Positions 899 to 43,126 of a DNA stretch of 43,126 nt are shown here, in pieces; position 1 is the first letter of the stretch; each line of letters begins with the position of its first letter. A model generated the notes under the pieces. The model saw only the letters and a list, made by a program, of their open reading frames with translations, did not search any database and had not been told where the DNA came from. The DNA is from Vitrella brassicaformis CCMP3155 (Eukaryota; Protista; Chromerida): assembly GCA_001179505.1 (NCBI GenBank), contig CDMY01000610.1, forward strand, positions 1 to 43,126, in the 5' to 3' direction. The position numbers were made by a program, and so were the translations under genes.

Positions 899-3800
899 TC
901 AGGCCACCCGCGGCACTGGCCTGCATTGGCTCACACATACACACACCCATGTGAAACTGTTCGCGTGTACGTGGATGAGTGCTGTGTAGGTACGTACATC
1001 GACGTAGAATTGAAGGCGTTCACAATGGCTTTAGCGTGCTTGCTGATGGCATCTGTGGGGTACTCAGTTAGCTTGTGGATGGACTCCTGGCAGCCACTCT
1101 GCACACAGACACGAAGCACATACTCGCACCTGTGTTAGACGTGCCCGTGTCAGTCAGGTCAGACCCTGCCAATGATGAGGTCCTTGACGCGTGTGCTCAA
1201 CGCCTCGGTCCCGCTGACAGGTCGATGCATCCACGACACACAATCACACACATGCGGTGCGGACGTCGGGCGTGCATGGGTTCGTCATACTTGGTGATGA
1301 TATCCTCGATCGACTTGAGCGCTGGAGCAAGTATGAAATCTCCCTGGTGATGGCGGGCAGGCCAGGACATGACCATGGCGCATGTAACGCGCTCAACGCA
1401 CTGGTACTCGACTGCGTGTGTCCGCTCCGTTTCGTTGCCCCAGGCCAGCAAGTTGATGCACGTGAAAGTCATCAGTCCGAACACTGCTGAGGACTTGTCC
1501 TTCTTAGCAGAAATCAGCTCACGGTAGGCTGTGAAGGTATTCGGCAGCACTGCCGCGTCGATGATGCTCGTGACGTCCGGACGCCTGCTCAGTTGGTTGA
1601 CACAGCCAAACAACGAAAAGCGCCGTGGGTTTCTCCTCCGCCGATTCACTCACTTGCCGTTAAGTATGTGGTGTCCGAGCGTGGCGGTCAGTGTGCCGGC
1701 GCTATTGTTGCGAATATCGGTATCAGATGAGAGCAGCAAGCTCGACAGCTTCATCAGTACATCACGCCCAGACAATATCTCTGCAAGAACAGATACACAC
1801 ACTTGTGCCCACCCTTCCTGCCTGCCTCCCTCCCTCCCTCCCTCCCTCTCTGTCTGTCTGTCTGTCTGTCTTGCCATGGCCCTTTCTTTCTTACCCACTG
1901 TGGGATCATTCGCGTTCCATTCGAGGCCCTTCCATTCGCCATGCACATTGACTGCGAATGCGAGCATCCAGGTGGCGGCTTTGGTGAGCGCCACCCCGTC
2001 GTCATCATCGCCGTCGTCGTGGTCGTCGAGCAGGTCGAGCACAAGAGACACCCCGCCCGCATCCAAAAACTCATCCACCCACAGGGTGCGATTCTGACCA
2101 GAGGTATCAGAAGTCGCCCAAACCGCCACATCAGACAGGAGCTTGAAGGTGTCTGCGGCCACATCCATGAGACCCAGCCCCATCGCTTGCTGGACGCCTG
2201 TGGCCAGGCCGGAAATGGCGCCCACTCTGGAGTTAACCAACACACAAGCCGCGGGATGGTCTTATGTACCCACAAGGCCTGTCTGCCTCCCTGCGTCTGT
2301 GTGTGGGTGCGTCTGTGGGTTCCTACCTGACGAGGACGTCGGCGGCTTGGGAGCCCATCTCTGCCACCTGCTGCAGTAGGTCCCGAGCCGCACGCCGCAC
2401 CTCATCATTCTCAAAGTCGACTGCAAGGTGAAGCAGGACGCTACCGTAGAGGTCAGCAACGCCCGCAGCAGTCTCATCCGAGCCATCATTCATGGATGCC
2501 GTGATCCGCTCCATTGCACGCAGCTGCTGGCTCTCATGTGGGCCTTCCAGCTGATCAATCACACTGGGATGCATCCCACCATCCTGCAGACAGACACATA
2601 CGGACAGCCAGCCAAGACGAAAGACGCGTTGTCTACTCTGTGTGTGTTGGGATGGGCAGTTGGAGAGGAGGGGGGTCGCGTACGTGTAGCGACACGGAGG
2701 CGAGGATCTTCTTGGCTTGTGCGCCGATGGAATCATTATGATACTTGGCAATCTCCGCGATCGACGACAGGCAGCCGGGCTGCAGGAGAGAAGGCAAGGG
2801 AGAGTCTCTCTCAGGACATCACAAAGGCGCGTCCAGTTGTATGCATACAAACTAACCGTTTCGATGATGATGTCTTTGACGCGCTGAGTCAACGAGGCAG
2901 ACTCCCGGCTGATCGATCGTAAGTGACGCGAGCACACAGACAGCGTGTGGGCAGACAGCTCTGTCTGTCTTCTCGTGTGCCTCTCTACCTGAGCACACGA
3001 CCAAGAGCGAGAATCGTTCCCCGCGACTGCACCAGCTGCACGCTTCTCTGCGGCCCTTCCGGCAGCTCAGCGGCGTCCCTGTACTTGTGCATCTCCTCAC
3101 ACGACAGCTCCACACACCCGTTGTGCACTGCATGCGCTTGCTGCAGCACACATGCAGATGCAGAGTTAGAGAAAGAGAGATGGCTCATGTGTGTGCTGAA
3201 AGACCAACCTGCATCTCGTTTCCGTCCTTGATCAGGTAGTCACATGCACTCCTCACGACCAAGAAGTAGTAATCCCCGTCCAGGCCTTTAGCCCAGTGGT
3301 CCTCATGATATGCTGCCATGGCATTCGGAACCACTGAAGCCGCGACGATTCGCGCAAGGCCCACAGGCAGCGTCTCGGGACGGCCCTTCCAATCTGACGG
3401 GTGGGGTGCGTAAACACACAGGCGCACCTCTCTCTGGTGTACATGCCACTGTTTTTGGCGTGCAGCGCAGCCTTACTTGCCACTTGCCCCGTCGCCGTGA
3501 GCGCCATGTACATCAGCCCAGCAGCCGACAATCGCGTGACAGGGTCGGCTGCCAAGAGCAGGGGCGACAGCTTTGTCACTGCATCATAATCCACCAAATC
3601 ATCCGCCACATGGTCCGACCACAAATCAAACCTCTCCTGCACAGCAACGGGATCATCATCCGAGACGCCGAAGGCGCCGGGCGAGGTTCGCGCCAATAGG
3701 TCGATCGCAGTCGCCCCAATCCTCAGGAGCCCCCCGTCCGTCAAGGCAAGGATGGGAGCCGTGTCATTGGCGTAATATTCCAGCAGCTTCGAGGCGACCG

Positions 3801-4381
3801 GCACGCCACGAGCCTCGATGAAGTCATCCACCAGGGCCGTCCCCTGGCTGGCGATCAACGTGCGAAGGGATCCTAGGAGGGTGCCCACACTGCTGCTGCC
3901 CATGTCCTTGTCGATGGCCTCGACCAGCGAGGGGATTGCGCCTTGGCTGAGCAAACAGACAGACAGACAGACAGACAGAAAGACAGACAGACAGACAGAC
4001 ACCGATGCATCCATAAATGCACACGCACCTCCCCACATACCTGACGAGCGATTCCACCGCGCGAGTGCCAGCACTGGCCATGCAGTGTAGCAGATCTCCA
4101 GCTGCACGCTGCACCTCGTCGCGCCCAGAGGTGCCGTTGCCCACCAGCTCAAAGATAAGTGCCCCGAACATGTCGGCCATGGTGGCCGCCACATCCTCAT
4201 GCCGTGTGGCTGTGCTGTTGGAGATGACGAACTCCATGGCCCGCAAGGCACTGAGTTGCTGACGCGTGTCGGTGCTCCGCAGCTGCTTCATCACATTGTT
4301 GGGCGTCGCATCATCGTCCTGCGCAGCGCCGCCCACGGCCGCCGACACGAAAGCCAGTGCCAAGGCCGCAGCCGACAACAT
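899..4381 (-). CDS. Multi-exon secreted ARM/HEAT-like helical repeat protein built from two tandem paralogous modules
   Basis: ATG at 4381 starts a signal-peptide-like MLSAAALALAFVSAAVGGA. Exons join through GT-AG introns to a TGA at 899-901 (...NSTSMPVPRVA*). Module 1 (about 4381-2680) and module 2 (about 2585-899) share motifs: DEVQRAAGDLLHCMA/DEVRRAARDLLQQVA, GAIPSL/GAISGL, SVVPNAMAAYHE/AVLPNTFTAYRE, LTQRVKDIII/LSTRVKDLII. The ARM/HEAT fold is inferred from amphipathic helical patterns only. Confidence 0.6.
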
Positions 4382-32979: not shown

Positions 32980-33394
32980 CGCAATCAATGGCCCAGGCCC
33001 AACCGGCCTCGAGCCCGACACGCGCGCGCGTGCGGGGGAGACCGGCGGGAGAACATGAATGTGTTCGGGTGGGTGGGTCGTTTGCGAATACGAGGGACGA
33101 GCTCCAAATCGCGAGCCCGGAGATCGTTACACGGAAGAAGGCGAGCAGGCGAGCTAGTGAGCTCGCTGGAGGCAGAGTCGCTACTGCGCCTCTGCCTGAT
33201 GTGTGTGCTCCGCTGCACGTACGTCCGCGACCGGACGTACCATCCTTACGCTCCCATACGTTCGCCTCCGCACCGATGTGTGCTCGCACTGCGAGCGTGC
33301 CTGTCTGCTGATCTGCCTGCCTGATCTGTCCTATCTTCACCGCAATCAATGGCCCAGGCCCAACCGGCCTCGAGCCCGACACGCGCGCGCGTGC
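32980..33394 (-). repeat. 3' terminal split-repeat block: B2 (32980-33033), A2 (33077-33257), B1 (33341-33394)
   Basis: B is a 54-bp repeat (cgcaatcaatggcccagg...cgcgcgtgc) present twice. A2 matches 42669-42841 apart from an 8-bp duplication and one substitution. Confidence 0.9.
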
Positions 33395-33631
33395 TCCCAA
33401 CGACCACGGTGAGCGGTGAAGATAGGAGGCCAGATCTGGCGCAGATCGACGCAGACGACCCTCCTGTATGTGTGTGTTTCGATGCAGGTGATGTCTGTCT
33501 TTGATGCGCTTCACTCGTTGCACTCACTCGTTCGCCCCTCCCCTTACGCCCAGTGCTCTGCGTTGTTTTGCTGTTTCGTCACAGCTTTCTCCACGGCGTT
33601 TCTCTCTGCTATTGTACACTGGTACGCTCTA

Positions 33632-34030
33632 CTACGCTCTCGCTGACATGCCTACGGTGTCTGTGTGTTCACAGGCCTTCGATGCGCCCCCATTGCGGAG
33701 GGAGTGTGACGATACCCGCGTCTGCATGCCCACTTCTTGCGCCGCCCGCTTGAGGGCCCTGTTCCAGGACGACCGGCTGGGTTGGTTCCTTTGTGTGTTG
33801 GCGCGTTCGCCCGCTTTGGGACGGATGAGGGGTGTGCCCTGCTCTTTGCGAAGTGCGGGAACCGGGAGGGCTTGCCCGGCAGCTGCAGGCGCAGCCCTTG
33901 CCCCGTGTGGTCGTTCTTCTGTTTGCGCATGAAGCTGGTGACCTTGTCCTCGGTCGCCTCGACGTCTCCCACTCGCACTCATCCGCCCTTCGCACACCGA
34001 AGAACTGGAGGAGGGGGATGGCTGCATTGC
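33632..34030 (-). pseudogene. Second partial copy of the tyrosine recombinase C-terminal region
   Basis: FFGVRRADE, VRVGDVE...RKQKND, SSHSLRNGGAS. It differs slightly from the 35132-35530 copy (HSLRKGG) and is cut by the gap. Confidence 0.8.
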
Positions 34031-34330
34031 NNNNNNNNNNNNNNNNNNNNNNNNNNNNNNNNNNNNNNNNNNNNNNNNNNNNNNNNNNNNNNNNNNNNNN
34101 NNNNNNNNNNNNNNNNNNNNNNNNNNNNNNNNNNNNNNNNNNNNNNNNNNNNNNNNNNNNNNNNNNNNNNNNNNNNNNNNNNNNNNNNNNNNNNNNNNNN
34201 NNNNNNNNNNNNNNNNNNNNNNNNNNNNNNNNNNNNNNNNNNNNNNNNNNNNNNNNNNNNNNNNNNNNNNNNNNNNNNNNNNNNNNNNNNNNNNNNNNNN
34301 NNNNNNNNNNNNNNNNNNNNNNNNNNNNNN

Positions 34331-34885
34331 TGTGTGTGCTCCGCTGCACGTACGTCCGCGACCGGACGTACCATCCTTACGCTCCCATACGTTCGCCTCC
34401 GCACCGATGTGTGCTCGCACTGCGAGCGTGCCTGTCTGCTGATCTGCCTGCCTGATCTGTCCTATCTTCACCGCAATCAATGGCCCAGGCCCAACCGGCC
34501 TCGAGCCCGACACGCGCGCGCGTGCGGGGGAGACCGGCGGGAGAACATGAATGTGTTCGGGTGGGTGGGTCGTTTGCGAATACGAGGGACGAGCTCCAAA
34601 TCGCGAGCCCGGAGATCGTTACACGGAAGAAGGCGAGCAGGCGAGCTAGTGAGCTCGCTGGAGGCAGAGTCGCTACTGCGCCTCTGCCTGATGTGTGTGC
34701 TCCGCTGCACGTACGTCCGCGACCGGACGTACCATCCTTACGCTCCCATACGTTCGCCTCCGCACCGATGTGTGCTCGCACTGCGAGCGTGCCTGTCTGC
34801 TGATCTGCCTGCCTGATCTGTCCTATCTTCACCGCAATCAATGGCCCAGGCCCAACCGGCCTCGAGCCCGACACGCGCGCGCGTG
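34331..34885 (-). repeat. Second terminal-repeat block: partial A, B (34471), A (34568-34748), B (34832); 361-bp periodicity
   Basis: Same sequence as 32980-33394, preceded by an extra A-tail plus spacer directly after the N gap. Confidence 0.85.
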
Positions 34886-35131
34886 CTCCCAACGACCACG
34901 GTGAGCGGTGAAGATAGGAGGCCAGATCTGGCGCAGATCGACGCAGACGACCCTCCTGTATGTGTGTGTTTCGACGCAGGTGATGTCTGTCTTTGATGAG
35001 CTTCACTCGCTGCACTGGGTGAGTCACTCGTTCGCCCCTCCCCTTACGCCCAGTGCTATGCGTTCTTTTGCTGTTTCGTCACAGCTTTCTCCACGGCGTT
35101 TCTCTCTGCTATTGTACACTGGTACGCTCTA

Positions 35132-36077
35132 CTACGCTCTCGCTGACATGCCTACGATGTCTGTGTGTTCACAGGCCTTCGATGCGCCCCCCTTGCGGAG
35201 GGAGTGTGACGATACCCGCGTCTGCATGCCCACTTCTTGCGCCGCCCGCTTGAGGGCCTTGTTCCAGGACGACCGGCTGGGTTGGTTCGTTTGTGTGTTG
35301 GCGCGTTCGCCCGCTTTGGGACGGATGAGGGGTGTGCCCTGCTCTTTGCGAAGTGCGGGAACCGGGAGGGCTTGCCCGGCAGCTGCAGGCGCAGCCCTTG
35401 CCCCGTGTGGTCGTTCTTCTGTTTGCGTATGAAGCTGGTGACCTTGTCCTCGGTCGCCTCGACGTCTCCCACTCGCACTCATCCGCCCTTCGCACACCGA
35501 AGAACTGGAGGAGGGGGAGGGCTGCATTGCGGACGTTGGCGTGCGTGGCGACGGTTGGTGTGACGCGCCACCAATGCCATACCAGTGGTGGGAGATACGC
35601 GGCTGGCAGCGGAACTGTGGGGTCGTAGTCGTTCCAGCACATATCGTTGCTATGGGCCGTCAGGCCTCGCAGAAAAACGCTGCACTTGGTCGCTCGGAAG
35701 GGCGGCTCGGGGTAGCCCTTCATGGTGTGCCAGAGGCGAAGGGCTGCGCGGACTTTGGGCAGCTTGTATGCGTGGCCTGGCACCACTGTGGCGATGGCAT
35801 AAATAATCTTCTCGGGTGAGTCAAGTGGGAAGAGTTGAGGGCACTTGTTGAACACCTCCGCTGCAATTCGACCGTATTCCTTCACTGTAGAGTCCGCGAG
35901 ACCGGTTTGGAAGCCCCTCCTGGCCACGAGGGTGACTTGCTCCCCGTCTGCGGGGTCGAATCCGAGGCTGCATGGGCATTGCAGGGCCGCTGCAAACGTA
36001 TCGGGCGACCTGGCGGTGCCAACGTCAACGACTACATCGCCTGATCCGCGGCGGGCGACCTCGATGTATCGCCATTT
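35132..36077 (-). pseudogene. Tyrosine recombinase (DIRS-type YR), frameshifted
   Basis: N-terminal core-binding-like region (LADSTVKEYGR...VRAALRLWHTMKG...VFLRGL), catalytic Arg motif LLQFFGVRRADE, then VRVGDVE...IRKQKNDHTGQG in another frame, then WNKALKRAAQEVG...SSHSLRKGGAS (H-x-x-R box) in a third. Confidence 0.85.
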
Positions 36078-36207: not shown

Positions 36208-36960
36208 TTACTTACACACGTACGTTAAAGCACACGGGCCCTTACTTCCCTGTTCTGTTTCTGCTTTTTCTGCCTCCTGTCTGAAGGCGTCCATCACTCT
36301 CTTGCCCTCTTGCCACTCCTGCACCTTCTTCGTCACCACGCCCTCTTGGAGCAAGCACGCCGTGCTCAACGCTCGTGGTGGGACGACGCTGTGCTTTGTG
36401 TCTGTGTAGGACTGAGCTAAGCGCAGGCACTTCGCCGCTCTCTGCATCTCTTCCTTTCCCTCAACGAAGCCGAGTGCCACGTGCACGCCAACGTCGAGCA
36501 GCTTCTCGCGCACTCTGCTCATGAGGTGACAGCAGCGGAAGGGCGACGACGCCAATCCAGACAGGACGTATCTGAAGCGATGGAACTTGGCCGTGGTCGG
36601 CGAACTTAAAGCCGAGCATATCGATTTCTTCTGGGGCCACTGGTAGGTGCAGAAATCCCTCTCTCATGTCCACTTTGGCCTGATGGTATCCTTCTCCAGC
36701 GCGTCGCTAATCGAGGGCAGCGAGAGGGGTGGCTTTGAGACGGCTGCTTGGCCTCTTGAGCGCGAGAGGTCCACCACCACCCGCACTTTGTCTGGAAAGC
36801 CGAAACTGCCCCGAGACGAGAGACGACCCACAGCGCTAAACTCGCTAACTAATCAGCCTGTCGATCTCGGCCGCCACGTTGTCTTTGTGCGCTTCGACTG
36901 ACCGATAGTTTCTCAGCTCGACCGAGGGCACCGGTGGCACCAGCGATATCGGCACTCCCT
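36208..36960 (-). pseudogene. Reverse transcriptase remnant of DIRS type, with stops, frameshifts and no YxDD
   Basis: ELRNYRSVEAHKDNVAAEIDRLI, KVRVVVDLSRS, KVDMREGFLHLPV, FHRFRYVLSGLASSPFRCCHLMSRV lie in shifting frames. No YxDD motif and no recognisable RNase H follow. Confidence 0.75.
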
Positions 36961-37380
36961 TCTCTTGGCTGCCACGAACGACTCATGGAAACGTATGGAA
37001 ACCCAACGTCTCTGCTCCTGCTGGTGGCAGCTGACGGCCCCGCACCCACGGTGTGGGTGTTTTGCGTGCGGGCTGCTGTTCGTGAGTGCCCGAAGGGGAG
37101 CTCGACGTCTACCGGCAGGTCTGCTTGTGTGTCCTCTTCCATGTGTACACGACACAGAGAAGGGGGAGAATGATGTACGTTGTATGCGTGTTGCGGCAGT
37201 AGCGTTTAGATGCCATGTCCCTGCATTCGTGTCACGCACGATGCGACTATGCACTGCATGGAAGCATTGCACGATTGCGATGACTATCACACACAGACAC
37301 TATTCCACTGACTATCGACTAAACACAATTCGAGAGTCGGCTTCGCGCCCTCGCTGTGAAACTACATGCCTGCGGGCTTG

Positions 37381-38327
37381 CTACGTGTTGGCCTTCAGCG
37401 GACCCTCACTCGCCCAGTGTACCCCGCCGCACCCGGGGTTGGGGCATTTGAGCATGCAATCCCGCGTGCAGTCCTTCAACGCGTGCTTCACCGACGGGTC
37501 GTCGGGCGACAGCCGGTGGCCCCTCACGCAGTTGAGGCAACATCCGTTGGGCACGCGCACGTTGTGCTGTGGGGACCCACTCGCCGCCGCTGCTGCTGCC
37601 GACGAGGTCGCGCCGCCCGTTGCAGGGCTGCGAGGCACCAGGGCCCTGACTCACACGAGACACACGACGCCCTCACACCCAAAAAAACTACGTGTTTTCT
37701 TTGACTCGGTCACTCACTTGGATGGGGCTACTACGACACTCTTGCCCTCGATCCGCTCAACGCGCGCATGCAGATCGGCCACCAATGCCGTGTCGAACAC
37801 GATGGGATACATCGGCCCGCCCTGCAGCTTGGCTGCACGCTGAATGGCCATCTTGATGTGGGCGCCCACACCTGTGCACGGCACAGGCGACGCATGGACG
37901 ACGTGTCACTTGGACGCTTCCCTTTGTCACTACTCCCATTCCTTTGCCCACTTACGTGTCGGCCTCCATAGACGTTGGAGACCTCGACGAGTTTTGTGTA
38001 TAAGGTGGTGAAGCGCGGCGCTTTCTCACGCTCCTCTGGCAGGAGCCCGTTGCGGTACATCTCGCCGAGCTTTGCAGCGTGCGGAGGATGTCGAGTGGGC
38101 CCACTTCCTTCACGTCGGTATACGTGAGCTGCAGGCTTCCTGTCCGTGCCCCGAAGACCGTGTTGTCCTTGTCCCTTCCTTTGCGCACTTCGATGGCGAG
38201 GGCTGCGCACAGGTCGCGCTGCATGGAGCCGTCTAGGTAGTGGGCGAGCATGTCTCCTTCCAGCAGCTGTCCCTGGGACCGCAGCTGCTCCTCCAGCCTT
38301 TTGACCACGTCGGCCAGCCGGCCGAGT
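37381..38327 (-). pseudogene. Partial frameshifted copy of the gag-like gene (3' exons)
   Basis: Paralogous to about 40156-41105. Carries 1-nt deletions (CTGCAAAGCTC versus CTGCAAAAGCTC; GCCCACATCAAG versus GCCGAACATGAAG). Confidence 0.75.
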
Positions 38328-38627
38328 NNNNNNNNNNNNNNNNNNNNNNNNNNNNNNNNNNNNNNNNNNNNNNNNNNNNNNNNNNNNNNNNNNNNNNNNN
38401 NNNNNNNNNNNNNNNNNNNNNNNNNNNNNNNNNNNNNNNNNNNNNNNNNNNNNNNNNNNNNNNNNNNNNNNNNNNNNNNNNNNNNNNNNNNNNNNNNNNN
38501 NNNNNNNNNNNNNNNNNNNNNNNNNNNNNNNNNNNNNNNNNNNNNNNNNNNNNNNNNNNNNNNNNNNNNNNNNNNNNNNNNNNNNNNNNNNNNNNNNNNN
38601 NNNNNNNNNNNNNNNNNNNNNNNNNNN

Positions 38628-39702
38628 CCAAGGCCCTGACTCACACGAGACACACGACGCCCTCACACTAAAAAAAACTACGTGTTTTTCTTGACTCGGT
38701 CACTCACTTGGATGGGGCTACTACGACACTCTTGCCCTCGATCCGCTCAACGCGCGCATGCAGATCGGCCACCAATGCCGTGTCGAACACGATGGGATAC
38801 ATCGGCCCGCCCTGCAGCTTGGCTGCACGCTGAATGGCCATCTTGATGTGGGCGCCCACACCTGTGCACGGCACAGGCGACGCATGGACGACGTGTCACT
38901 TGGACGCTTCCCTTTGTCACTACTCCCATTCCTTTGCCCACTTACGTGTCGGCCTCCATAGACGTTGGAGACCTCGACGAGTTTTGTGTATAAGGTGGTG
39001 AAGCGCGGCGCTTTCTCACGCTCCTCTGGCAGGAGCCCGTTGCGGTACATCTCGCCGAGCTTTGCAGCGTGCGGAGGATGTCGAGTGGGCCCACTTCCTT
39101 CACGTCGGTATACGTGAGCTGCAGGCTTCCTGTCCGTGCCCCGAAGACCGTGTTGTCCTTGTCCCTTCCTTTGCGCACTTCGATGGCGAGGGCTGCGCAC
39201 AGGTCGCGCTGCATGGAGCCGTCTAGGTAGTGGGCGAGCATGTCTCCTTCCAGCAGCTGTCCCTGGGACCGCAGCTGCTCCTCCAGCCTTTTGACCACGT
39301 CGGCCAGCCGGCCGAGTGCTGGGTGCTGGAGAAAGAGAGGGTCTGCTTTGATGCTGTCCACCTCGGACACGTGCTGGACGTTGCGGTCGGATGTGGTGAT
39401 CAGCTGGCAGAAGACGCTCCTGTTATCGACAGCCGGTGCCTGCACACACACACACACACACACGCACGCACACCACCACACACACCAGAGCCCACACAAA
39501 TTGCCCCTCGGCGAGCGCTACTTGGTTGAGCACGTGCTCTCACTGACCGCGGCCTGCTGCATGGCCTGCTGTATACTGGTGGCTAAGGCCTGGCACGCGC
39601 CCATATCAAACTGGCCACTTGGCTGTACGGGGTTGGGCGACGAGTCGCCCAGGTTGCCTCCGGTCAGGCTGGTGAACGGCGTGGGCACTGCCTCACTCGG
39701 GT
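38628..39702 (-). pseudogene. Third partial copy of the gag-like gene, between two N gaps
   Basis: Paralogous to about 40413-41480. Carries the same two deletions as the 37.4-38.3 kb copy and retains all three introns. Confidence 0.7.
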
Positions 39703-40155
39703 NNNNNNNNNNNNNNNNNNNNNNNNNNNNNNNNNNNNNNNNNNNNNNNNNNNNNNNNNNNNNNNNNNNNNNNNNNNNNNNNNNNNNNNNNNNNNNNNNN
39801 NNNNNNNNNNNNNNNNNNNNNNNNNNNNNNNNNNNNNNNNNNNNNNNNNNNNNNNNNNNNNNNNNNNNNNNNNNNNNNNNNNNNNNNNNNNNNNNNNNNN
39901 NNNNNNNNNNNNNNNNNNNNNNNNNNNNNNNNNNNNNNNNNNNNNNNNNNNNNNNNNNNNNNNNNNNNNNNNNNNNNNNNNNNNNNNNNNNNNNNNNNNN
40001 NNCGTGTCACGCACGATGCGACTATGCACTGCATGGAAGTCTTGCACGATTGCGATGACTATTACGCACAGACATTATTCCACTGACTATCGACTAAACA
40101 CAATTCGAGAGTCGGCTTCGCGCCCTCGCTGTGAAACTACATGCCTGCGGGCTTG

Positions 40156-42616
40156 CTACGTGTTGGCCTTCAGCGGACACTCACTCGCCCAGTGTACCCC
40201 GCCGCACCCGGGGTTCGGGCATTTGAGCATGCAATCCCGCGTGCAGTCCTTCAACGCGTGCTTCACCGACGGGTCGTCGGGCGACAGCCGGTGGCCCCTC
40301 ACGCAGTTGAGGCAACATCCGTTGGGCACGCGCACGTTGTGCTGGGGGGACCCACTCGCCGCCGCTGCTGCTGCCGACGAGGTCGCGCCGCCCGTTGCAG
40401 GGCTGCGAGGCACCAAGGCCCTGACTCACACGAGACACACGACGCCCTCACACTAAAAAAAACTACGTGTTTTTCTTGACTCGGTCACTCACTTGGATGG
40501 GGCTACTACGACACTCTTGCCCTCGATCCGCTCAACGCGCGCGTGCAGATCGGCCACCAATGCCGTGTCGAACACGATGGGATACATCGGCCCGCCCTGC
40601 AGCTTGGCTGCACGCTGAATGGCCATCTTCATGTTCGGCGCCCACACCTGTGCACGGCACAGGCGACGCATGGACGACGTGTCACTTGAACGCTTCCCTT
40701 CGTCACTACTCCCATTCCTTTGCCCACTCACATGTCGGCCTCCATAGACGTTGGAGACCTCGACGAGTTTTGTGTATAAGGTGGTGAAGCGCGGCGCTTT
40801 CTCACGCTCCTCTGGCAGGAGCCCGTTGCGGTACATCTCGCCGAGCTTTTGCAGCGTGCGGAGGATGTCGAGTGGGCCCATTTCCTTCACGTCGGTATAC
40901 GTGAGCTGCAGGCTGCCTGTCCGTGCCCCGAAGACCGTGTTGTCCTTGTCCCTTCCTTTGCGCACTTCGATGGCGAGGGCTGCGCACAGGTCGCGCTGCA
41001 TGGAGCCGTCTAGGTAGTGGGCGACCATGTTTCCTTCCAGCAGCTGTCCCTGGGACCGCAGCTGCTCCTCCAGCCTTTTGACCACGTCGGCCAGCCGGCC
41101 AGGTGCTGGGTGCTGGAGAAAGAGAGGGTCTGCTTTGATGCTGTCCACCTCTGACACGTGCTTGACGTTGCGGTCGGATGTGATGATCAGCTGGCAGAAG
41201 ACGCTCCTGTTATCGACGACCGGTGCCTGCACACACGCACACACACACACACACACACCACCACACACACCAGAACCCACACAAATTGCCCCTCGGCGAG
41301 CGCTACTCGCTTGAGCACGTGCTCTCACTGACCGCGGCCTGCTGCATGGCCTGCTGTATACTGGTGGCTAAGGCCTGGCACGCGCCCATATCTAACTGGC
41401 CACTTGGCTGTGGGGGGTCGGGCGGCGAGGCGCCCAGGTTGCCTCCGCTCAGGCTGGCGAATGGCGTGGGCCCTGCTTCACTCGAAGAGGCGCCCATCGA
41501 CTGGTTCTCGAATAGTGGTTGAATATGTGACGCCCCATTGGATGCGATCCCCTGCATGATTCCCAGTGCTGACCTCGGTTGGGTGTTCGCTGGCGGCATC
41601 AGTCCTGCTGGCGGCATCAGTCCTGCTGGCGGAATCAGTCCTGGTGGCGGCATCAGTCCCTGTGGCGGCTGCTGGGTGGATGTGGCGGCGGCCGCAGCTG
41701 CTGGTTGGCTCCAGGGTGTTGGAGGCGCCATGCTCTGGATGACGGCTGGCCCCGTTGTCGCGATACCTGTGGCTGCGGCTGCAGCTGCTGCGGGGCTTGA
41801 TGAGGCGCCGGCGGTTGGTGAGGGGGCCCCTGTTGCCGGGGTGGTGCCTGAGATTGTCGCCGGAGCTGAGCCTATGACCACTCCTCCCGCTGTTCCCCTC
41901 CCTCCCGGCTGGTTGTTGTTGTTGTTATTGTTGTTGTTGGACATCATGTACACCATCACCTCCTGGCCCGTAGTGCTCTCCATCCATTCCAGGGTTTTGA
42001 AGTGGGGCTCCCAGTCGTCGCCCTGGATGGGGGCCGTTGTTTTCGTCGATCCACCTGTCTCTCCAGTCCCACCTCCCTTCGCAAAAGGCGCCAGGCCGGC
42101 TACCAGCTGCTGTGCCGCTTGGTTCGTCAGCCACTGCCCGACCTTTTGCACCATCTCCAACTTCAGCAGTTTCTCTACGGCTTGGATGGCCAAGGCGGCA
42201 TTCATTCTCTCGATTGCTGGGTGGGTGGACGGCATGCGAGGGGTGGGTGGAAAAGGGAAGGGAGGTATGTCACCGCCTCCTTGGGTCCCCGACGACGCCA
42301 TGGGATCTCTCTTCTTTGCCGCTGTCGGGATGGTGCCGTTGGTGCTCCCCACTTTTGGCGGTCTGTTCTGGCTTGGCGAGGAGTGCCTGCGCCCGAACAG
42401 CCCTTGCCAACGCATCATCCCTTGCCAACGCATCATAGCCATGAGCTCTCCGTGATCCACCGTGGAAAACTCAGTCTGGCTGCTGCCGTTGGTCATCCTG
42501 GATGTTGTTGGCCTGCCCCGACGCTGCATGCGCCCGGGGTGTCCTTGCCGGCCTCGTTGTGGCGGTGGCACACCGCCGACGGCCGCAACGAATGCGAGGA
42601 GCCACACGATCCGCAT
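40156..42616 (-). CDS. Gag-like ORF1 of the YR retroelement, 4 exons, 732 aa, with C-terminal CCHC-like zinc knuckles
   Basis: Exons 42616-41333, 41226-40732, 40647-40493 and 40420-40156 total 2199 nt, an open frame ending in TAG. C-terminus: CLNCVRGH...HALKDC and CPNPGCGGVHWASEC. Low-complexity P/A/G/Q/N linker. Confidence 0.75.
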
Positions 42617-42668
42617 GCCGAAGGATGCCGTTACAGGGATGAGGTGTGGCTGTTCGTGCGTTGTCGTC

Positions 42669-42841
42669 GTCGTTTGCGAATACGAGGGACGAGCTCCAAA
42701 TCGCGAGCCCGGAGATCGTTACACGGAAGAAGGCGAGCTAGTGAGCTCGCTGGAGGCAGAGTCGCTATTGCGCCTCTGCCTGATGTGTGTGCTCCGCTGC
42801 ACGTACGTCCGCGACCGGACGTACCATCCTTACGCTCCCAT
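42669..42841 (-). repeat. 5' terminal repeat A1 of the element
   Basis: Direct repeat of 33077-33257 and 34568-34748. Similarity stops abruptly after ctcccat at 42841. Confidence 0.9.
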
Positions 42842-42999
42842 CTGAGGTAAACGGACGGCGCGCGGATCGCTCCGTTTTGTCGTTTGCGAGCTGCTCTCCG
42901 TTCCTGTCGCGACAGCCAGCAAACTCTGCCGCTTTCCTGTCGTCGACAAATAGGAGAACTACTCGACAGTTTTCTGTCTTTCCTCATTCTTTGTCAAAC

Positions 43000-43126
43000 A
43001 TGGCGGACGTTTCGATGACTGATTCGGCTGGTGGCAAGACGGCGGTGCATGTGCCGGATGCACTGACCGAGAACAAGGCCTTCACCTTCTCCACCACCCA
43101 CAACGCGGTCGTGGACTTCTTCTTCG
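43000..43126 (+). CDS. 5' end of a DUF2828-like protein, truncated by the window edge
   Basis: MADVSMTDSAGGKTAVHVPDALTENKAFTFSTTHNAVVDFFF resembles the TEN-x-A-x-T-x-S-(S/T)-x4-(L/V)DFFF N-terminal motif I recall for DUF2828 proteins. Confidence 0.6.
   Translation, partial: MADVSMTDSAGGKTAVHVPDALTENKAFTFSTTHNAVVDFFF

What the first reader, a model, noticed from the sequence alone, without database searches (positions are those of the whole stretch)
40156..42616. Retrotransposon gag-like gene interrupted by three spliceosomal introns
Seen: three GT-AG introns, at 41227-41332 (gtcagt...TG-repeat...tgcag, phase 0, 106 nt), 40648-40731 (gtgagt...gcacag, phase 0, 84 nt) and 40421-40492 (gtgagt...gtcag, phase 2, 72 nt, contains an in-frame stop). 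Removing them joins three separate ORFs into one 732-aa frame ending in zinc knuckles. Introns 1 and 3 are required for the frame. They look like the host introns in neighbouring genes. Established: reverse transcription of a processed RNA removes introns, so retroelements are normally intron-free (Penelope-like elements are the known exception; Cryptons are YR elements with introns but have no RT). Inference: this YR family either packages an unspliced genomic RNA while translating Gag from a spliced mRNA, or spreads through a DNA route, or ORF1 is being domesticated.
Basis: partly seen in the sequence, partly recalled or inferred. Interest (0 to 1): 0.9.

Follow-up and report, generated by a model that had tools for sequence, protein, structure and literature searches.

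The report
Spliced introns in retrotransposon gag gene
The capsid-like (gag) gene of a rare, now crippled jumping gene in the alga Vitrella brassicaformis really does carry three ordinary introns that the cell splices out, and the scattered copies inherited those introns, which is unexpected for an element thought to copy itself through RNA.

Summary
The three GT-AG introns (41227-41332, 40648-40731, 40421-40492, minus strand) are removed at exactly those bases in contigs of three independent runs that behave as RNA. The same junctions appear in two JGI contigs and in an MMETSP-derived protein. A genome-sized run keeps the introns. Exon arithmetic gives 733 codons.

The gene is a true element gag. 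It is homologous to ORF1 of an intronless, complete gag/RT-RNaseH/YR element elsewhere in this genome (Vitrella brassicaformis CCMP3155). Intron 2 falls exactly where that relative's ORF is continuous.

- Its RT stops just after a degenerate catalytic box.
- RNase H is absent.
- The recombinase reading frame is broken in the same way in every copy.

Only three gag-bearing loci exist, 5-8% apart, each with a different 5' flank starting at the same base. Intron 1 is in all three, and intron 2 in both loci that reach its site. One locus has a 76-nt deletion in place of intron 3. No processed copy exists.

So intron-bearing templates were copied, by unspliced RNA or by DNA. Which route is unresolved. 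The scan holds unchecked notes of gag introns in other Vitrella YR elements.

The parts
42669..42841 (-). A1 terminal repeat and 5' end of the element. All copies begin homology at 42841.
   Evidence: 173-181 nt repeated at 34569-34749 and 33077-33257. The flanks of C610, C620 and C123 diverge exactly here.
41333..42616 (-). gag exon 1 (1284 nt, low-complexity P/A/G/N-rich). The true start may be a downstream ATG near 42441.
41227..41332 (-). Intron 1, 106 nt, GT-AG, phase 0, with a TG repeat. Present in C610a, C610b, C620 and C123.
   Evidence: X3 record 8; L034 junction GCCGCG|GCACCGG.
40732..41226 (-). gag exon 2 (165 codons), an all-helical conserved core homologous to the gag of the C1057 element.
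40648..40731 (-). Intron 2, 84 nt, GT-AG, phase 0. It is an exact insertion relative to the intronless relative.
   Evidence: (joints in X3 and X7), (28-residue gap exactly at RH|VWA).
40493..40647 (-). gag exon 3 (155 nt).
40421..40492 (-). Intron 3, 72 nt, GT-AG, phase 2, with an in-frame stop. C620 has a 76-nt deletion here instead.
   Evidence: X1, X3, X7; P0002, P0005, P0006.
40156..40420 (-). gag exon 4: A/S-rich linker, two CCHC-like zinc knuckles with unusual spacing, and the stop codon.
   Evidence: The relative keeps the same Cys/His pattern. UniRef names P0004 'Nanos-type domain-containing protein'.
37228..39699 (-). Two partial tandem repeats of gag (C610b 38628-39699, C610c 37228-38323) between N gaps. 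They share single-base losses. They are either a true tandem array or a scaffolding artefact.
   Evidence: The transcripts of X1 and MMETSP are of this type.
36337..37072 (-). RT remnant: N-terminal half only, with several frame breaks. The catalytic box position reads FVEG. There is no thumb and no RNase H.
   Evidence: against the intact RTs of C499 and C1057 (Pfam RVT_1 and RT_RNaseH).
35165..36059 (-). Tyrosine recombinase remnant, split over three reading frames. The HSLRKGGA box is present.
   Evidence: The same breaks occur in C620 and in the second partial copy at 33665-33969.
34388..34886 (-). B1 (34749-34886), A2 (34569-34749) and B2 (34388-34525): the split direct repeat at the 3' end.
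32980..34388 (-). A second, internally deleted copy in head-to-tail tandem: 58 nt of A, then the YR 3' part, then B-A-B.
36220..36699 (+). Two introns of an antisense (plus-strand) spliced transcript over the RT remnant: 36220-36286 and 36643-36699, GT-AG on the plus strand.

Best explanation
This is the ORF1 (gag-like) gene of a very low-copy, non-autonomous PAT/Ngaro-type tyrosine-recombinase retroelement of Vitrella brassicaformis. The gene carries three genuine spliceosomal introns.

Shown:
- The host spliceosome removes all three introns efficiently from the sense transcript. In the focal copy this leaves one 732-codon frame: a low-complexity N-terminal part, a helical core and two CCHC-like knuckles.
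- At least intron 2 is an insertion relative to an intronless sister family.
- The introns were present in the ancestor of the dispersed copies and were inherited with them.
- That ancestor already had a dead RT and a frame-broken YR.

Inferred:
- The copies were therefore made from a template that still held the introns, using enzymes supplied by related autonomous elements of the same genome.
- The template was either unspliced RNA that was reverse-transcribed, or the DNA itself moved by recombinase action on the A/B repeats.
- Today the locus is an expressed relic. Its gag message is processed like a host gene, and an antisense spliced transcript overlaps its pol remnant.
For: Splicing at the exact bases:
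- It is seen in three studies' contigs, with zero intron depth, while a genome-sized run keeps the introns.
- The same junctions occur in L034 and L035 and in the MMETSP protein P0006.

Gag identity:
- HMMER hit to P0003 (E 6e-6 against 1.8 billion proteins).
- tblastn E 1e-20 to the 450-aa ORF1 of the C1057 element, which also has RVT_1 and Phage_integrase ORFs.
- Intron 2 equals a 28-residue gap at RH|VWA in that alignment.

Copies:
- Three loci have different flanks from the same first base.
- Intron 1 is in all three. Intron 2 is in C610 and C620. The introns are 95-97% identical between copies.
- No intronless copy exists in the 72.7-Mb assembly.

Defective pol shared by the copies.

Split direct repeats A1...B1-A2-B2.
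Against: - Only three loci exist, so the inference of copying after intron gain rests on few events. Ectopic gene conversion between copies could also spread introns.
- No unspliced transcript was seen in the RNA-like runs, although contigs drop rare forms.
- The run types are not on record and were inferred from size and depth.
- dN/dS of 0.5-0.7 between copies does not separate a functional gag from slow decay.
- The assembly around the element has N gaps and repeated blocks, so the exact structure and copy count are uncertain.
- The gag fold could not be verified (pLDDT 60, no Foldseek hit).
Confidence: 0.72

Rival explanations
1. Domestication. The focal gag copy is becoming, or already is, a host gene. 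Introns, steady expression and loss of RT and YR function would all reflect a switch from parasite to host-kept protein. The other copies would be decaying duplicates.
For: - The spliced frame is intact only in the focal copy, while C620 and C123 are broken.
- Contig depth is of the same order as a neighbouring gene in X3.
- pol is dead.
- The public annotation treats the copies as ordinary multi-exon genes.
- An unchecked scan note reports a domesticated, intron-bearing DIRS-type RT gene in this genome.
Against: - dN/dS of 0.5-0.8 against the other copies shows no strong constraint.
- No orthologue outside Vitrella was found in 1.8 billion representatives.
- The introns predate the dispersal of copies, so they are not a consequence of a single locus being fixed as a gene.
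- The gene still sits inside complete element termini.
Confidence: 0.2
2. Retrovirus-like strategy of a living family. Gag is translated from a multiply spliced mRNA, while a minor unspliced RNA serves as the template for reverse transcription, with enzymes supplied in trans. Introns would therefore persist in new copies.
For: - Introns are inherited by dispersed copies with exact element ends.
- Autonomous relatives with intact RT/RH/YR exist in the same genome.
- The C1057 gene model has a GT-AG intron that removes the gag stop and fuses gag to pol (model only).
- Precedents exist in other orders: BARE, PMC3735527, and Penelope, PMC4209133 (both listed; only their abstracts were seen here).
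Against: - No unspliced contig was found in three RNA-like runs.
- The copies are 5-8% diverged and mostly broken, so there is no sign of recent activity.
- RT and YR are dead in the family.
- The relatives are too divergent for trans-recognition to be assumed (27% identity in gag).
Confidence: 0.12
3. DNA route. After losing its RT the family behaved like a Crypton. A recombinase supplied in trans excised and re-inserted the DNA through the A/B repeats, so introns could accumulate and be kept.
For: - RT is dead, yet exact-ended copies with introns exist.
- There is a head-to-tail tandem partial copy, plus isolated repeat fragments on C330 and C750 that end at repeat borders.
- Cryptons are YR elements that tolerate introns (PMC3212892, listed and not read here; PMC13465315).
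Against: - The YR of the family is itself frame-broken in all copies.
- No circles or excision footprints were shown.
- Tandem blocks may be assembly artefacts (N gaps).
- Homologous recombination explains solo fragments equally well.
Confidence: 0.15
4. Cryptic splicing of junk. The joints are opportunistic use of chance GT..AG pairs in transcripts of a decaying element, and the long joined frame has no biological meaning.
For: - The same locus gives spliced antisense RNA over the pol remnant, which shows that the spliceosome acts on non-coding element RNA.
- Constraint on gag is weak.
Against: - Three of three introns restore one 733-codon frame.
- Intron 2 matches exactly a gap against an intronless homologue.
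- Donors are strong (GTGAGT twice) and splicing is complete.
- The introns are conserved between copies.
Confidence: 0.08

Closest known systems
PAT/Ngaro-type tyrosine-recombinase retrotransposons (order DIRS)
   Same: Split direct repeats A1...B1-A2-B2. ORF1 sits upstream of RT and YR. The YR has the HSLR.GGA box. Copies insert into or next to each other. Antisense transcription occurs, as in DIRS-1.
   Different: ORF1 has three spliceosomal introns. The RT is truncated and its catalytic box is lost. There is no RNase H. The YR is frame-broken. Two surveys of the order never use the words intron or splicing (PMC3266345, PMC3783388), and the Symbiodinium DIRS elements are described as intronless (PMC5890265).
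LTR retrotransposons and retroviruses that use splicing (BARE, PMC3735527; Ogre and copia from my own knowledge)
   Same: A retroelement keeps introns in its genomic copies and makes a spliced message for Gag or for a Gag-Pol fusion. The replication template must be unspliced.
   Different: Those elements are DDE-integrase LTR elements with one functional splice and abundant active copies. Here there are three introns inside gag itself, which is untranslatable without splicing, in a YR element that is defective.
Penelope-like elements
   Same: Retroelements known for retaining spliceosomal introns in their copies (PMC4209133).
   Different: A different RT clade, a GIY-YIG endonuclease, no gag and no YR. 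Nothing of that kind was seen here, but no Penelope-specific search was made.
Crypton DNA transposons
   Same: YR-encoding eukaryotic elements whose genes carry introns. They move as DNA.
   Different: Cryptons have no RT, no gag and no split direct repeats. This family has remnants of all three.
Domesticated gag genes (Arc, PEG10 and SIRH type; my own knowledge)
   Same: A gag-derived, intron-containing, expressed gene whose pol has decayed.
   Different: Those are single-copy, orthologous across species and under clear purifying selection. Here there are several decaying copies inside intact element ends, no orthologues, and dN/dS of 0.5-0.8.

Membership tests
DIRS-order YR retroelement, PAT/Ngaro type | Split direct repeats A1 ... 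B1-A2-B2 | tested here: met
   A1 is 42669-42841, B1 is 34749-34886, A2 is 34569-34749, B2 is 34388-34525. The C620 copy has the same layout.
DIRS-order YR retroelement, PAT/Ngaro type | Reverse transcriptase with a catalytic YxDD box, plus RNase H | tested here: not met
   Only the N-terminal half of the RT is present. The box position reads FVEG and there is no RNase H. Pfam finds no RT. The element is a defective derivative, not an autonomous member.
DIRS-order YR retroelement, PAT/Ngaro type | Tyrosine recombinase ORF | tested here: inconclusive
   Homology is clear (E 3e-41 to the C1057 YR; weak Pfam PF00589 hit), but it is spread over three frames in all copies. The catalytic Tyr was not examined.
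DIRS-order YR retroelement, PAT/Ngaro type | ORF1 (gag-like) at the 5' end, belonging to the element | tested here: met
   It is present in all three loci from the common 5' end and is homologous to ORF1 of the complete C1057 element.
Retroviral-type Gag (capsid fold plus CX2CX4HX4C knuckle) | Capsid-like fold | tested here: inconclusive
   The AF2 model of exon 2 is all-helical but has mean pLDDT 59.7. Foldseek against PDB gave no hit with E <= 0.001. Pfam and the Atlas gave nothing.
Retroviral-type Gag (capsid fold plus CX2CX4HX4C knuckle) | Canonical CCHC spacing | tested here: not met
   The Cys/His pattern CX2C...H...HX4C and CX4CX3HX4C differs from CX2CX4HX4C. It is conserved with the relative's gag.
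Spliceosomal (U2-type) intron | GT-AG borders and precise removal from RNA | tested here: met
   for all three introns.
Introner (transposon-derived intron family) | The intron sequence is repeated in many unrelated genes | tested here: not met
   Introns 2 and 3 match only copies of this family. The only other matches of intron 1 are TG repeats.
Domesticated gag gene | Single orthologous locus under purifying selection | tested here: not met
   There are several copies, dN/dS is 0.5-0.8, and no homologue was found outside Vitrella. No sister-species data were available.
Crypton | YR only, with no RT or gag and short target duplications | tested here: not met
   An RT remnant, gag and split direct repeats are present. 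Target duplications were not examined.

The most novel reading that the evidence does not exclude
Vitrella's tyrosine-recombinase retroelements may form a lineage that lives with spliceosomal introns. Gag (and in the C1057 family a Gag-Pol fusion) would be made only from spliced mRNA. New copies would derive from an unspliced RNA or from recombinase-moved DNA. This would be the first intron-bearing members of the DIRS order, and possibly a retroelement caught turning into a Crypton-like DNA element.
Probability: 0.2. Interest if true: 0.8.

Novelty: new variant of a known kind. Interest (0 to 1): 0.55.

Why it matters
Reverse transcription of processed RNA should strip introns from a retroelement. 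A YR element whose gag cannot be translated without three splices, and whose dispersed copies all keep those introns, therefore limits how such elements were copied. The template was either unspliced RNA or DNA moved by the recombinase.

This bears on the long-discussed link between Crypton DNA transposons and DIRS-type retroelements. It also bears on how host-style introns enter selfish genes in intron-rich protists.

There is a practical warning as well. The published Vitrella annotation flagged TE genes only if they had at most two introns (PMC4501334), so elements like this one pass as ordinary genes.

The weight of the case is limited. The family is dead and has only three loci.

Tried and rejected
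- Pfam on the gag pieces and on all pol ORFs of the window and of C620 gave nothing useful, apart from a weak eIF3g zinc-knuckle hit and a weak Phage_integrase hit.
- ESM Atlas on exon 2 gave no usable hit.
- The AF2 model of exon 2 with a 3-row alignment had pLDDT 59.7. Foldseek against PDB gave no match with E <= 0.001, so the capsid fold is unproven.
- The search for homologous proteins with the exon-1 ORF and with the gag part of P0003 returned only Vitrella proteins.
- The look-up of encoding contigs for P0003 found nothing on record.
- At first I read three further gaps in transcript contig L034 (over the RT remnant) as sense introns in pol. I rejected this. Their borders are CT..AC on the minus strand, that is GT-AG on the plus strand, and removing them does not restore the RT frame. 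They belong to an antisense transcript merged into an unstranded assembly.
- C602 looked like a possible closer relative, but it holds only short fragments.
- The C1057 family is single-copy, so retention of its putative gag-pol intron across copies could not be tested.
- Tandem-duplication origin of intron 2: only the first ~10 nt resemble the start of exon 3, as judged by eye on the sequences, so I did not pursue it.
- The 76-nt gap in C620 is not a clean intron loss. It removes the 72-nt intron plus 4 exon bases, has no GT-AG borders under any of the equivalent placements, and leaves the frame broken.
- Two surveys of DIRS-order elements (PMC3783388, PMC3266345) contain no occurrence of 'intron' or 'splic'.
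Full report
**Organism and setting**

The window is contig C610 (43,126 bp) of a 72.7-Mb, 1064-scaffold assembly. Protein names returned by the search identify it as Vitrella brassicaformis CCMP3155. The size and scaffold number match the published genome, which reports only about 1.5 Mb of transposable elements (PMC4501334).

**The observation**

- Exon 1 is 42616-41333.
- Intron 1 is 41332-41227 (GTCAGT...TGTGCAG, 106 nt, with a TG repeat).
- Exon 2 is 41226-40732.
- Intron 2 is 40731-40648 (GTGAGT...GCACAG, 84 nt).
- Exon 3 is 40647-40493.
- Intron 3 is 40492-40421 (GTGAGT...GTCAG, 72 nt).
- Exon 4 is 40420-40156.

The exon lengths (1284, 495, 155 and 265 nt) sum to 733 codons including the stop, with phases 0, 0 and 2. 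Read-through of intron 1 and of intron 3 meets a stop at once. Intron 2 is open in frame. I checked frames by arithmetic and exon by exon.

**RNA evidence**

One read-laying run on 40006-43126 used four runs from four studies.
- X1, X3 and X7 have 27-52 Mb of contigs and strongly uneven depth.
  - They carry a 72-nt joint that is exactly 40421-40492.
  - X3 and X7 carry an 84-nt joint that is exactly 40648-40731. X1 shows it in a variant copy.
  - X3 record 8 joins exon 1 to exon 2 across intron 1.
- Depth in the bins that hold introns equals the exon fraction times the exon depth. For example, 39/105 x 225.7 = 83.8, which is the value observed. No contig of these runs therefore covers introns 2 and 3.
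- X4 has 99.7 Mb of contigs and even depth of about 19-20 on the unique flank. It has a contig running unbroken through intron 3 into intron 2, so it behaves as a DNA run.
- The run types are not on record. This assignment is my inference.

Independent support comes from proteins and contigs:
- P0002, found by HMMER, is encoded on two JGI contigs, L034 and L035. These contigs carry all three exact junctions.
- Its cluster includes an MMETSP transcript product (P0006) and the public gene model of this very contig (P0005). Both read ...VAPSK|ALVPRS... across intron 3.

The introns are real and efficiently spliced.

**Is it the element's gag?**

Yes, for four reasons.
- The three gag-bearing loci (C610, C620:19515-28005, and C123, which is cut by its contig end) become homologous at the same base, window 42841. 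The ATG lies 225 nt further in.
- C620 is bounded by the same split direct repeats A1...B1-A2-B2 as the window copy.
- The only non-self homologue among 1.84 billion representatives is P0003, another Vitrella protein (27% identity, E 6e-6).
- P0003's gene lies on C1057 as the first ORF (450 aa, continuous) of an element whose later ORFs hit RVT_1 and Phage_integrase. A further family on C499 has gag, RT plus RT_RNaseH, and YR in three long intronless ORFs.

The C1057 gag aligns with exons 2-4 of the focal gene, including the same unusual Cys/His knuckles. It shows a 28-residue gap exactly at intron 2 (...RH|VWA...). Intron 2 is thus an insertion relative to an intronless sister, not intronized coding sequence.

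Introns 2 and 3 occur nowhere else in the genome, so they are not introner copies.

The fold of the conserved core could not be established.

- Against the intact RTs of C499 and C1057, homology in the window (37072-36337) and in C620 covers only the N-terminal half and needs several frame changes.
- It ends just after the position of the catalytic box, which reads FVEG.
- Thumb and RNase H are absent, and the YR follows directly.
- The YR (36059-35165) is spread over three frames. The same breaks are seen in C620 and in the second partial copy.
- These lesions are shared, so they predate the copying that produced the present loci.

**Copies**

- The family consists of three gag-bearing loci plus short repeat fragments on C330 and C750.
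- The loci differ by 5-8%.
- Intron 1 is present in all three. Intron 2 is in C610 and C620 (C123 ends before it). Intron identity is 95-97%, no lower than synonymous sites.
- C620 lacks 76 nt that span intron 3 plus four exon bases. The gap has no GT-AG borders and leaves the frame broken. It looks like an imprecise deletion centred on the intron.
- C123 has two stops in exon 1 and an extra in-frame 294-nt coding block.
- dN/dS between copies is 0.5-0.7.
- No processed copy exists in the assembly.

Inside the window the element is followed head-to-tail by an internally deleted copy. Its gag is repeated twice in part between N gaps. This may be a real array or a scaffolding artefact.

**Transcript contig L034**

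L034 also shows three gaps over the RT remnant. Their borders are GT-AG on the plus strand (36220-36286, 36643-36699, and one seen only in C620), and removing them does not restore RT. They belong to an antisense spliced RNA that the unstranded assembly merged with the gag message. There is therefore no evidence for sense introns in pol.

**Interpretation**

Shown:
- The introns are genuine.
- The gene is the element's own gag.
- The introns are older than the dispersal of the copies.
- The family is non-autonomous.

Inferred: the copies were templated by something unspliced, with enzymes borrowed from autonomous relatives. That template was either an unspliced RNA or DNA moved by recombinase action on the A/B repeats.

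I cannot separate these two routes. Present-day RNA shows only the spliced form, the family looks long inactive, and three loci leave room for gene conversion.

Domestication of the focal copy is possible but unsupported by constraint or orthology. Pure cryptic splicing fits poorly.

**Comparison with what is known**

- Splicing by retroelements is known in retroviruses, some LTR retrotransposons and Penelope-like elements (PMC3735527, PMC4209133; both known here only from the abstracts listed).
- For the DIRS order I found no description. Two surveys never mention introns, and the Symbiodinium DIRS elements are called intronless.

Hence I rate it a new variant of a known kind, of moderate interest.

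**Earlier notes of this scan**

The scan holds unchecked first-reader notes of gag introns in other Vitrella YR elements. One is 8490 letters long, which may be the C620 copy. There is also one follow-up on an intron-bearing domesticated DIRS-type RT. I used them only as leads. If they hold, the phenomenon is a trait of the lineage rather than of this one relic.

Noticed in passing
window 36220-36286 and 36643-36699 (+); L031 6381-6460: A spliced antisense (plus-strand) transcript runs over the RT remnant with GT-AG introns of 67, 57 and 80 nt. It overlaps the 3' part of a gag copy, so sense and antisense RNA could pair, as in the RNAi control of DIRS-1 (PMC7192593).
   Followed up: partly
L049 about 3780-4120 (G000:C1057 about 39780-40120): In the intact, single-copy C1057 element the public gene model (P0003) uses a GTACGT...CTGCAG intron. 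That intron removes the gag stop codon and fuses gag in frame to the start of pol, giving a splice-made Gag-Pol. This is a model only; I saw no RNA for it.
   Followed up: partly
L048 245-5190 (G000:C499): An apparently intact intronless YR retroelement with gag of 408 aa, RT plus RNase H of 776 aa, and an overlapping YR of 467 aa. It is a candidate source of enzymes acting in trans.
   Followed up: partly
window 42812-43126: A contig of high depth in X3 (870) runs from inside the A1 repeat across the element boundary into the neighbouring plus-strand gene, which starts at ATG 42998. RNA-like contigs also cross the 5' boundary at the C620 and C123 loci. Transcription is therefore not confined to the element.
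   Followed up: no
L032 (G000:C123) opposite window about 42078: The C123 copy holds an extra in-frame 294-nt block, read as a 98-aa stretch by the public gene model P0001. The C610 and C620 copies lack it, which suggests the order (C123,(C610,C620)).
   Followed up: partly
L051 2551-2781 (G000:C330) and L050 2616-2873 (G000:C750): Isolated short fragments of the element's 3' repeat region (99.6% and 93% identical). The C330 fragment and one end of the C750 fragment stop at a repeat border. They may be remains of recombination or truncated copies.
   Followed up: partly
window 37228-39699: The two partial gag repeats share two single-base losses. They are nonetheless the copy type seen in X1 and in the MMETSP and JGI transcripts, so a frame-broken copy is the main expressed one in some data sets.
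   Followed up: partly
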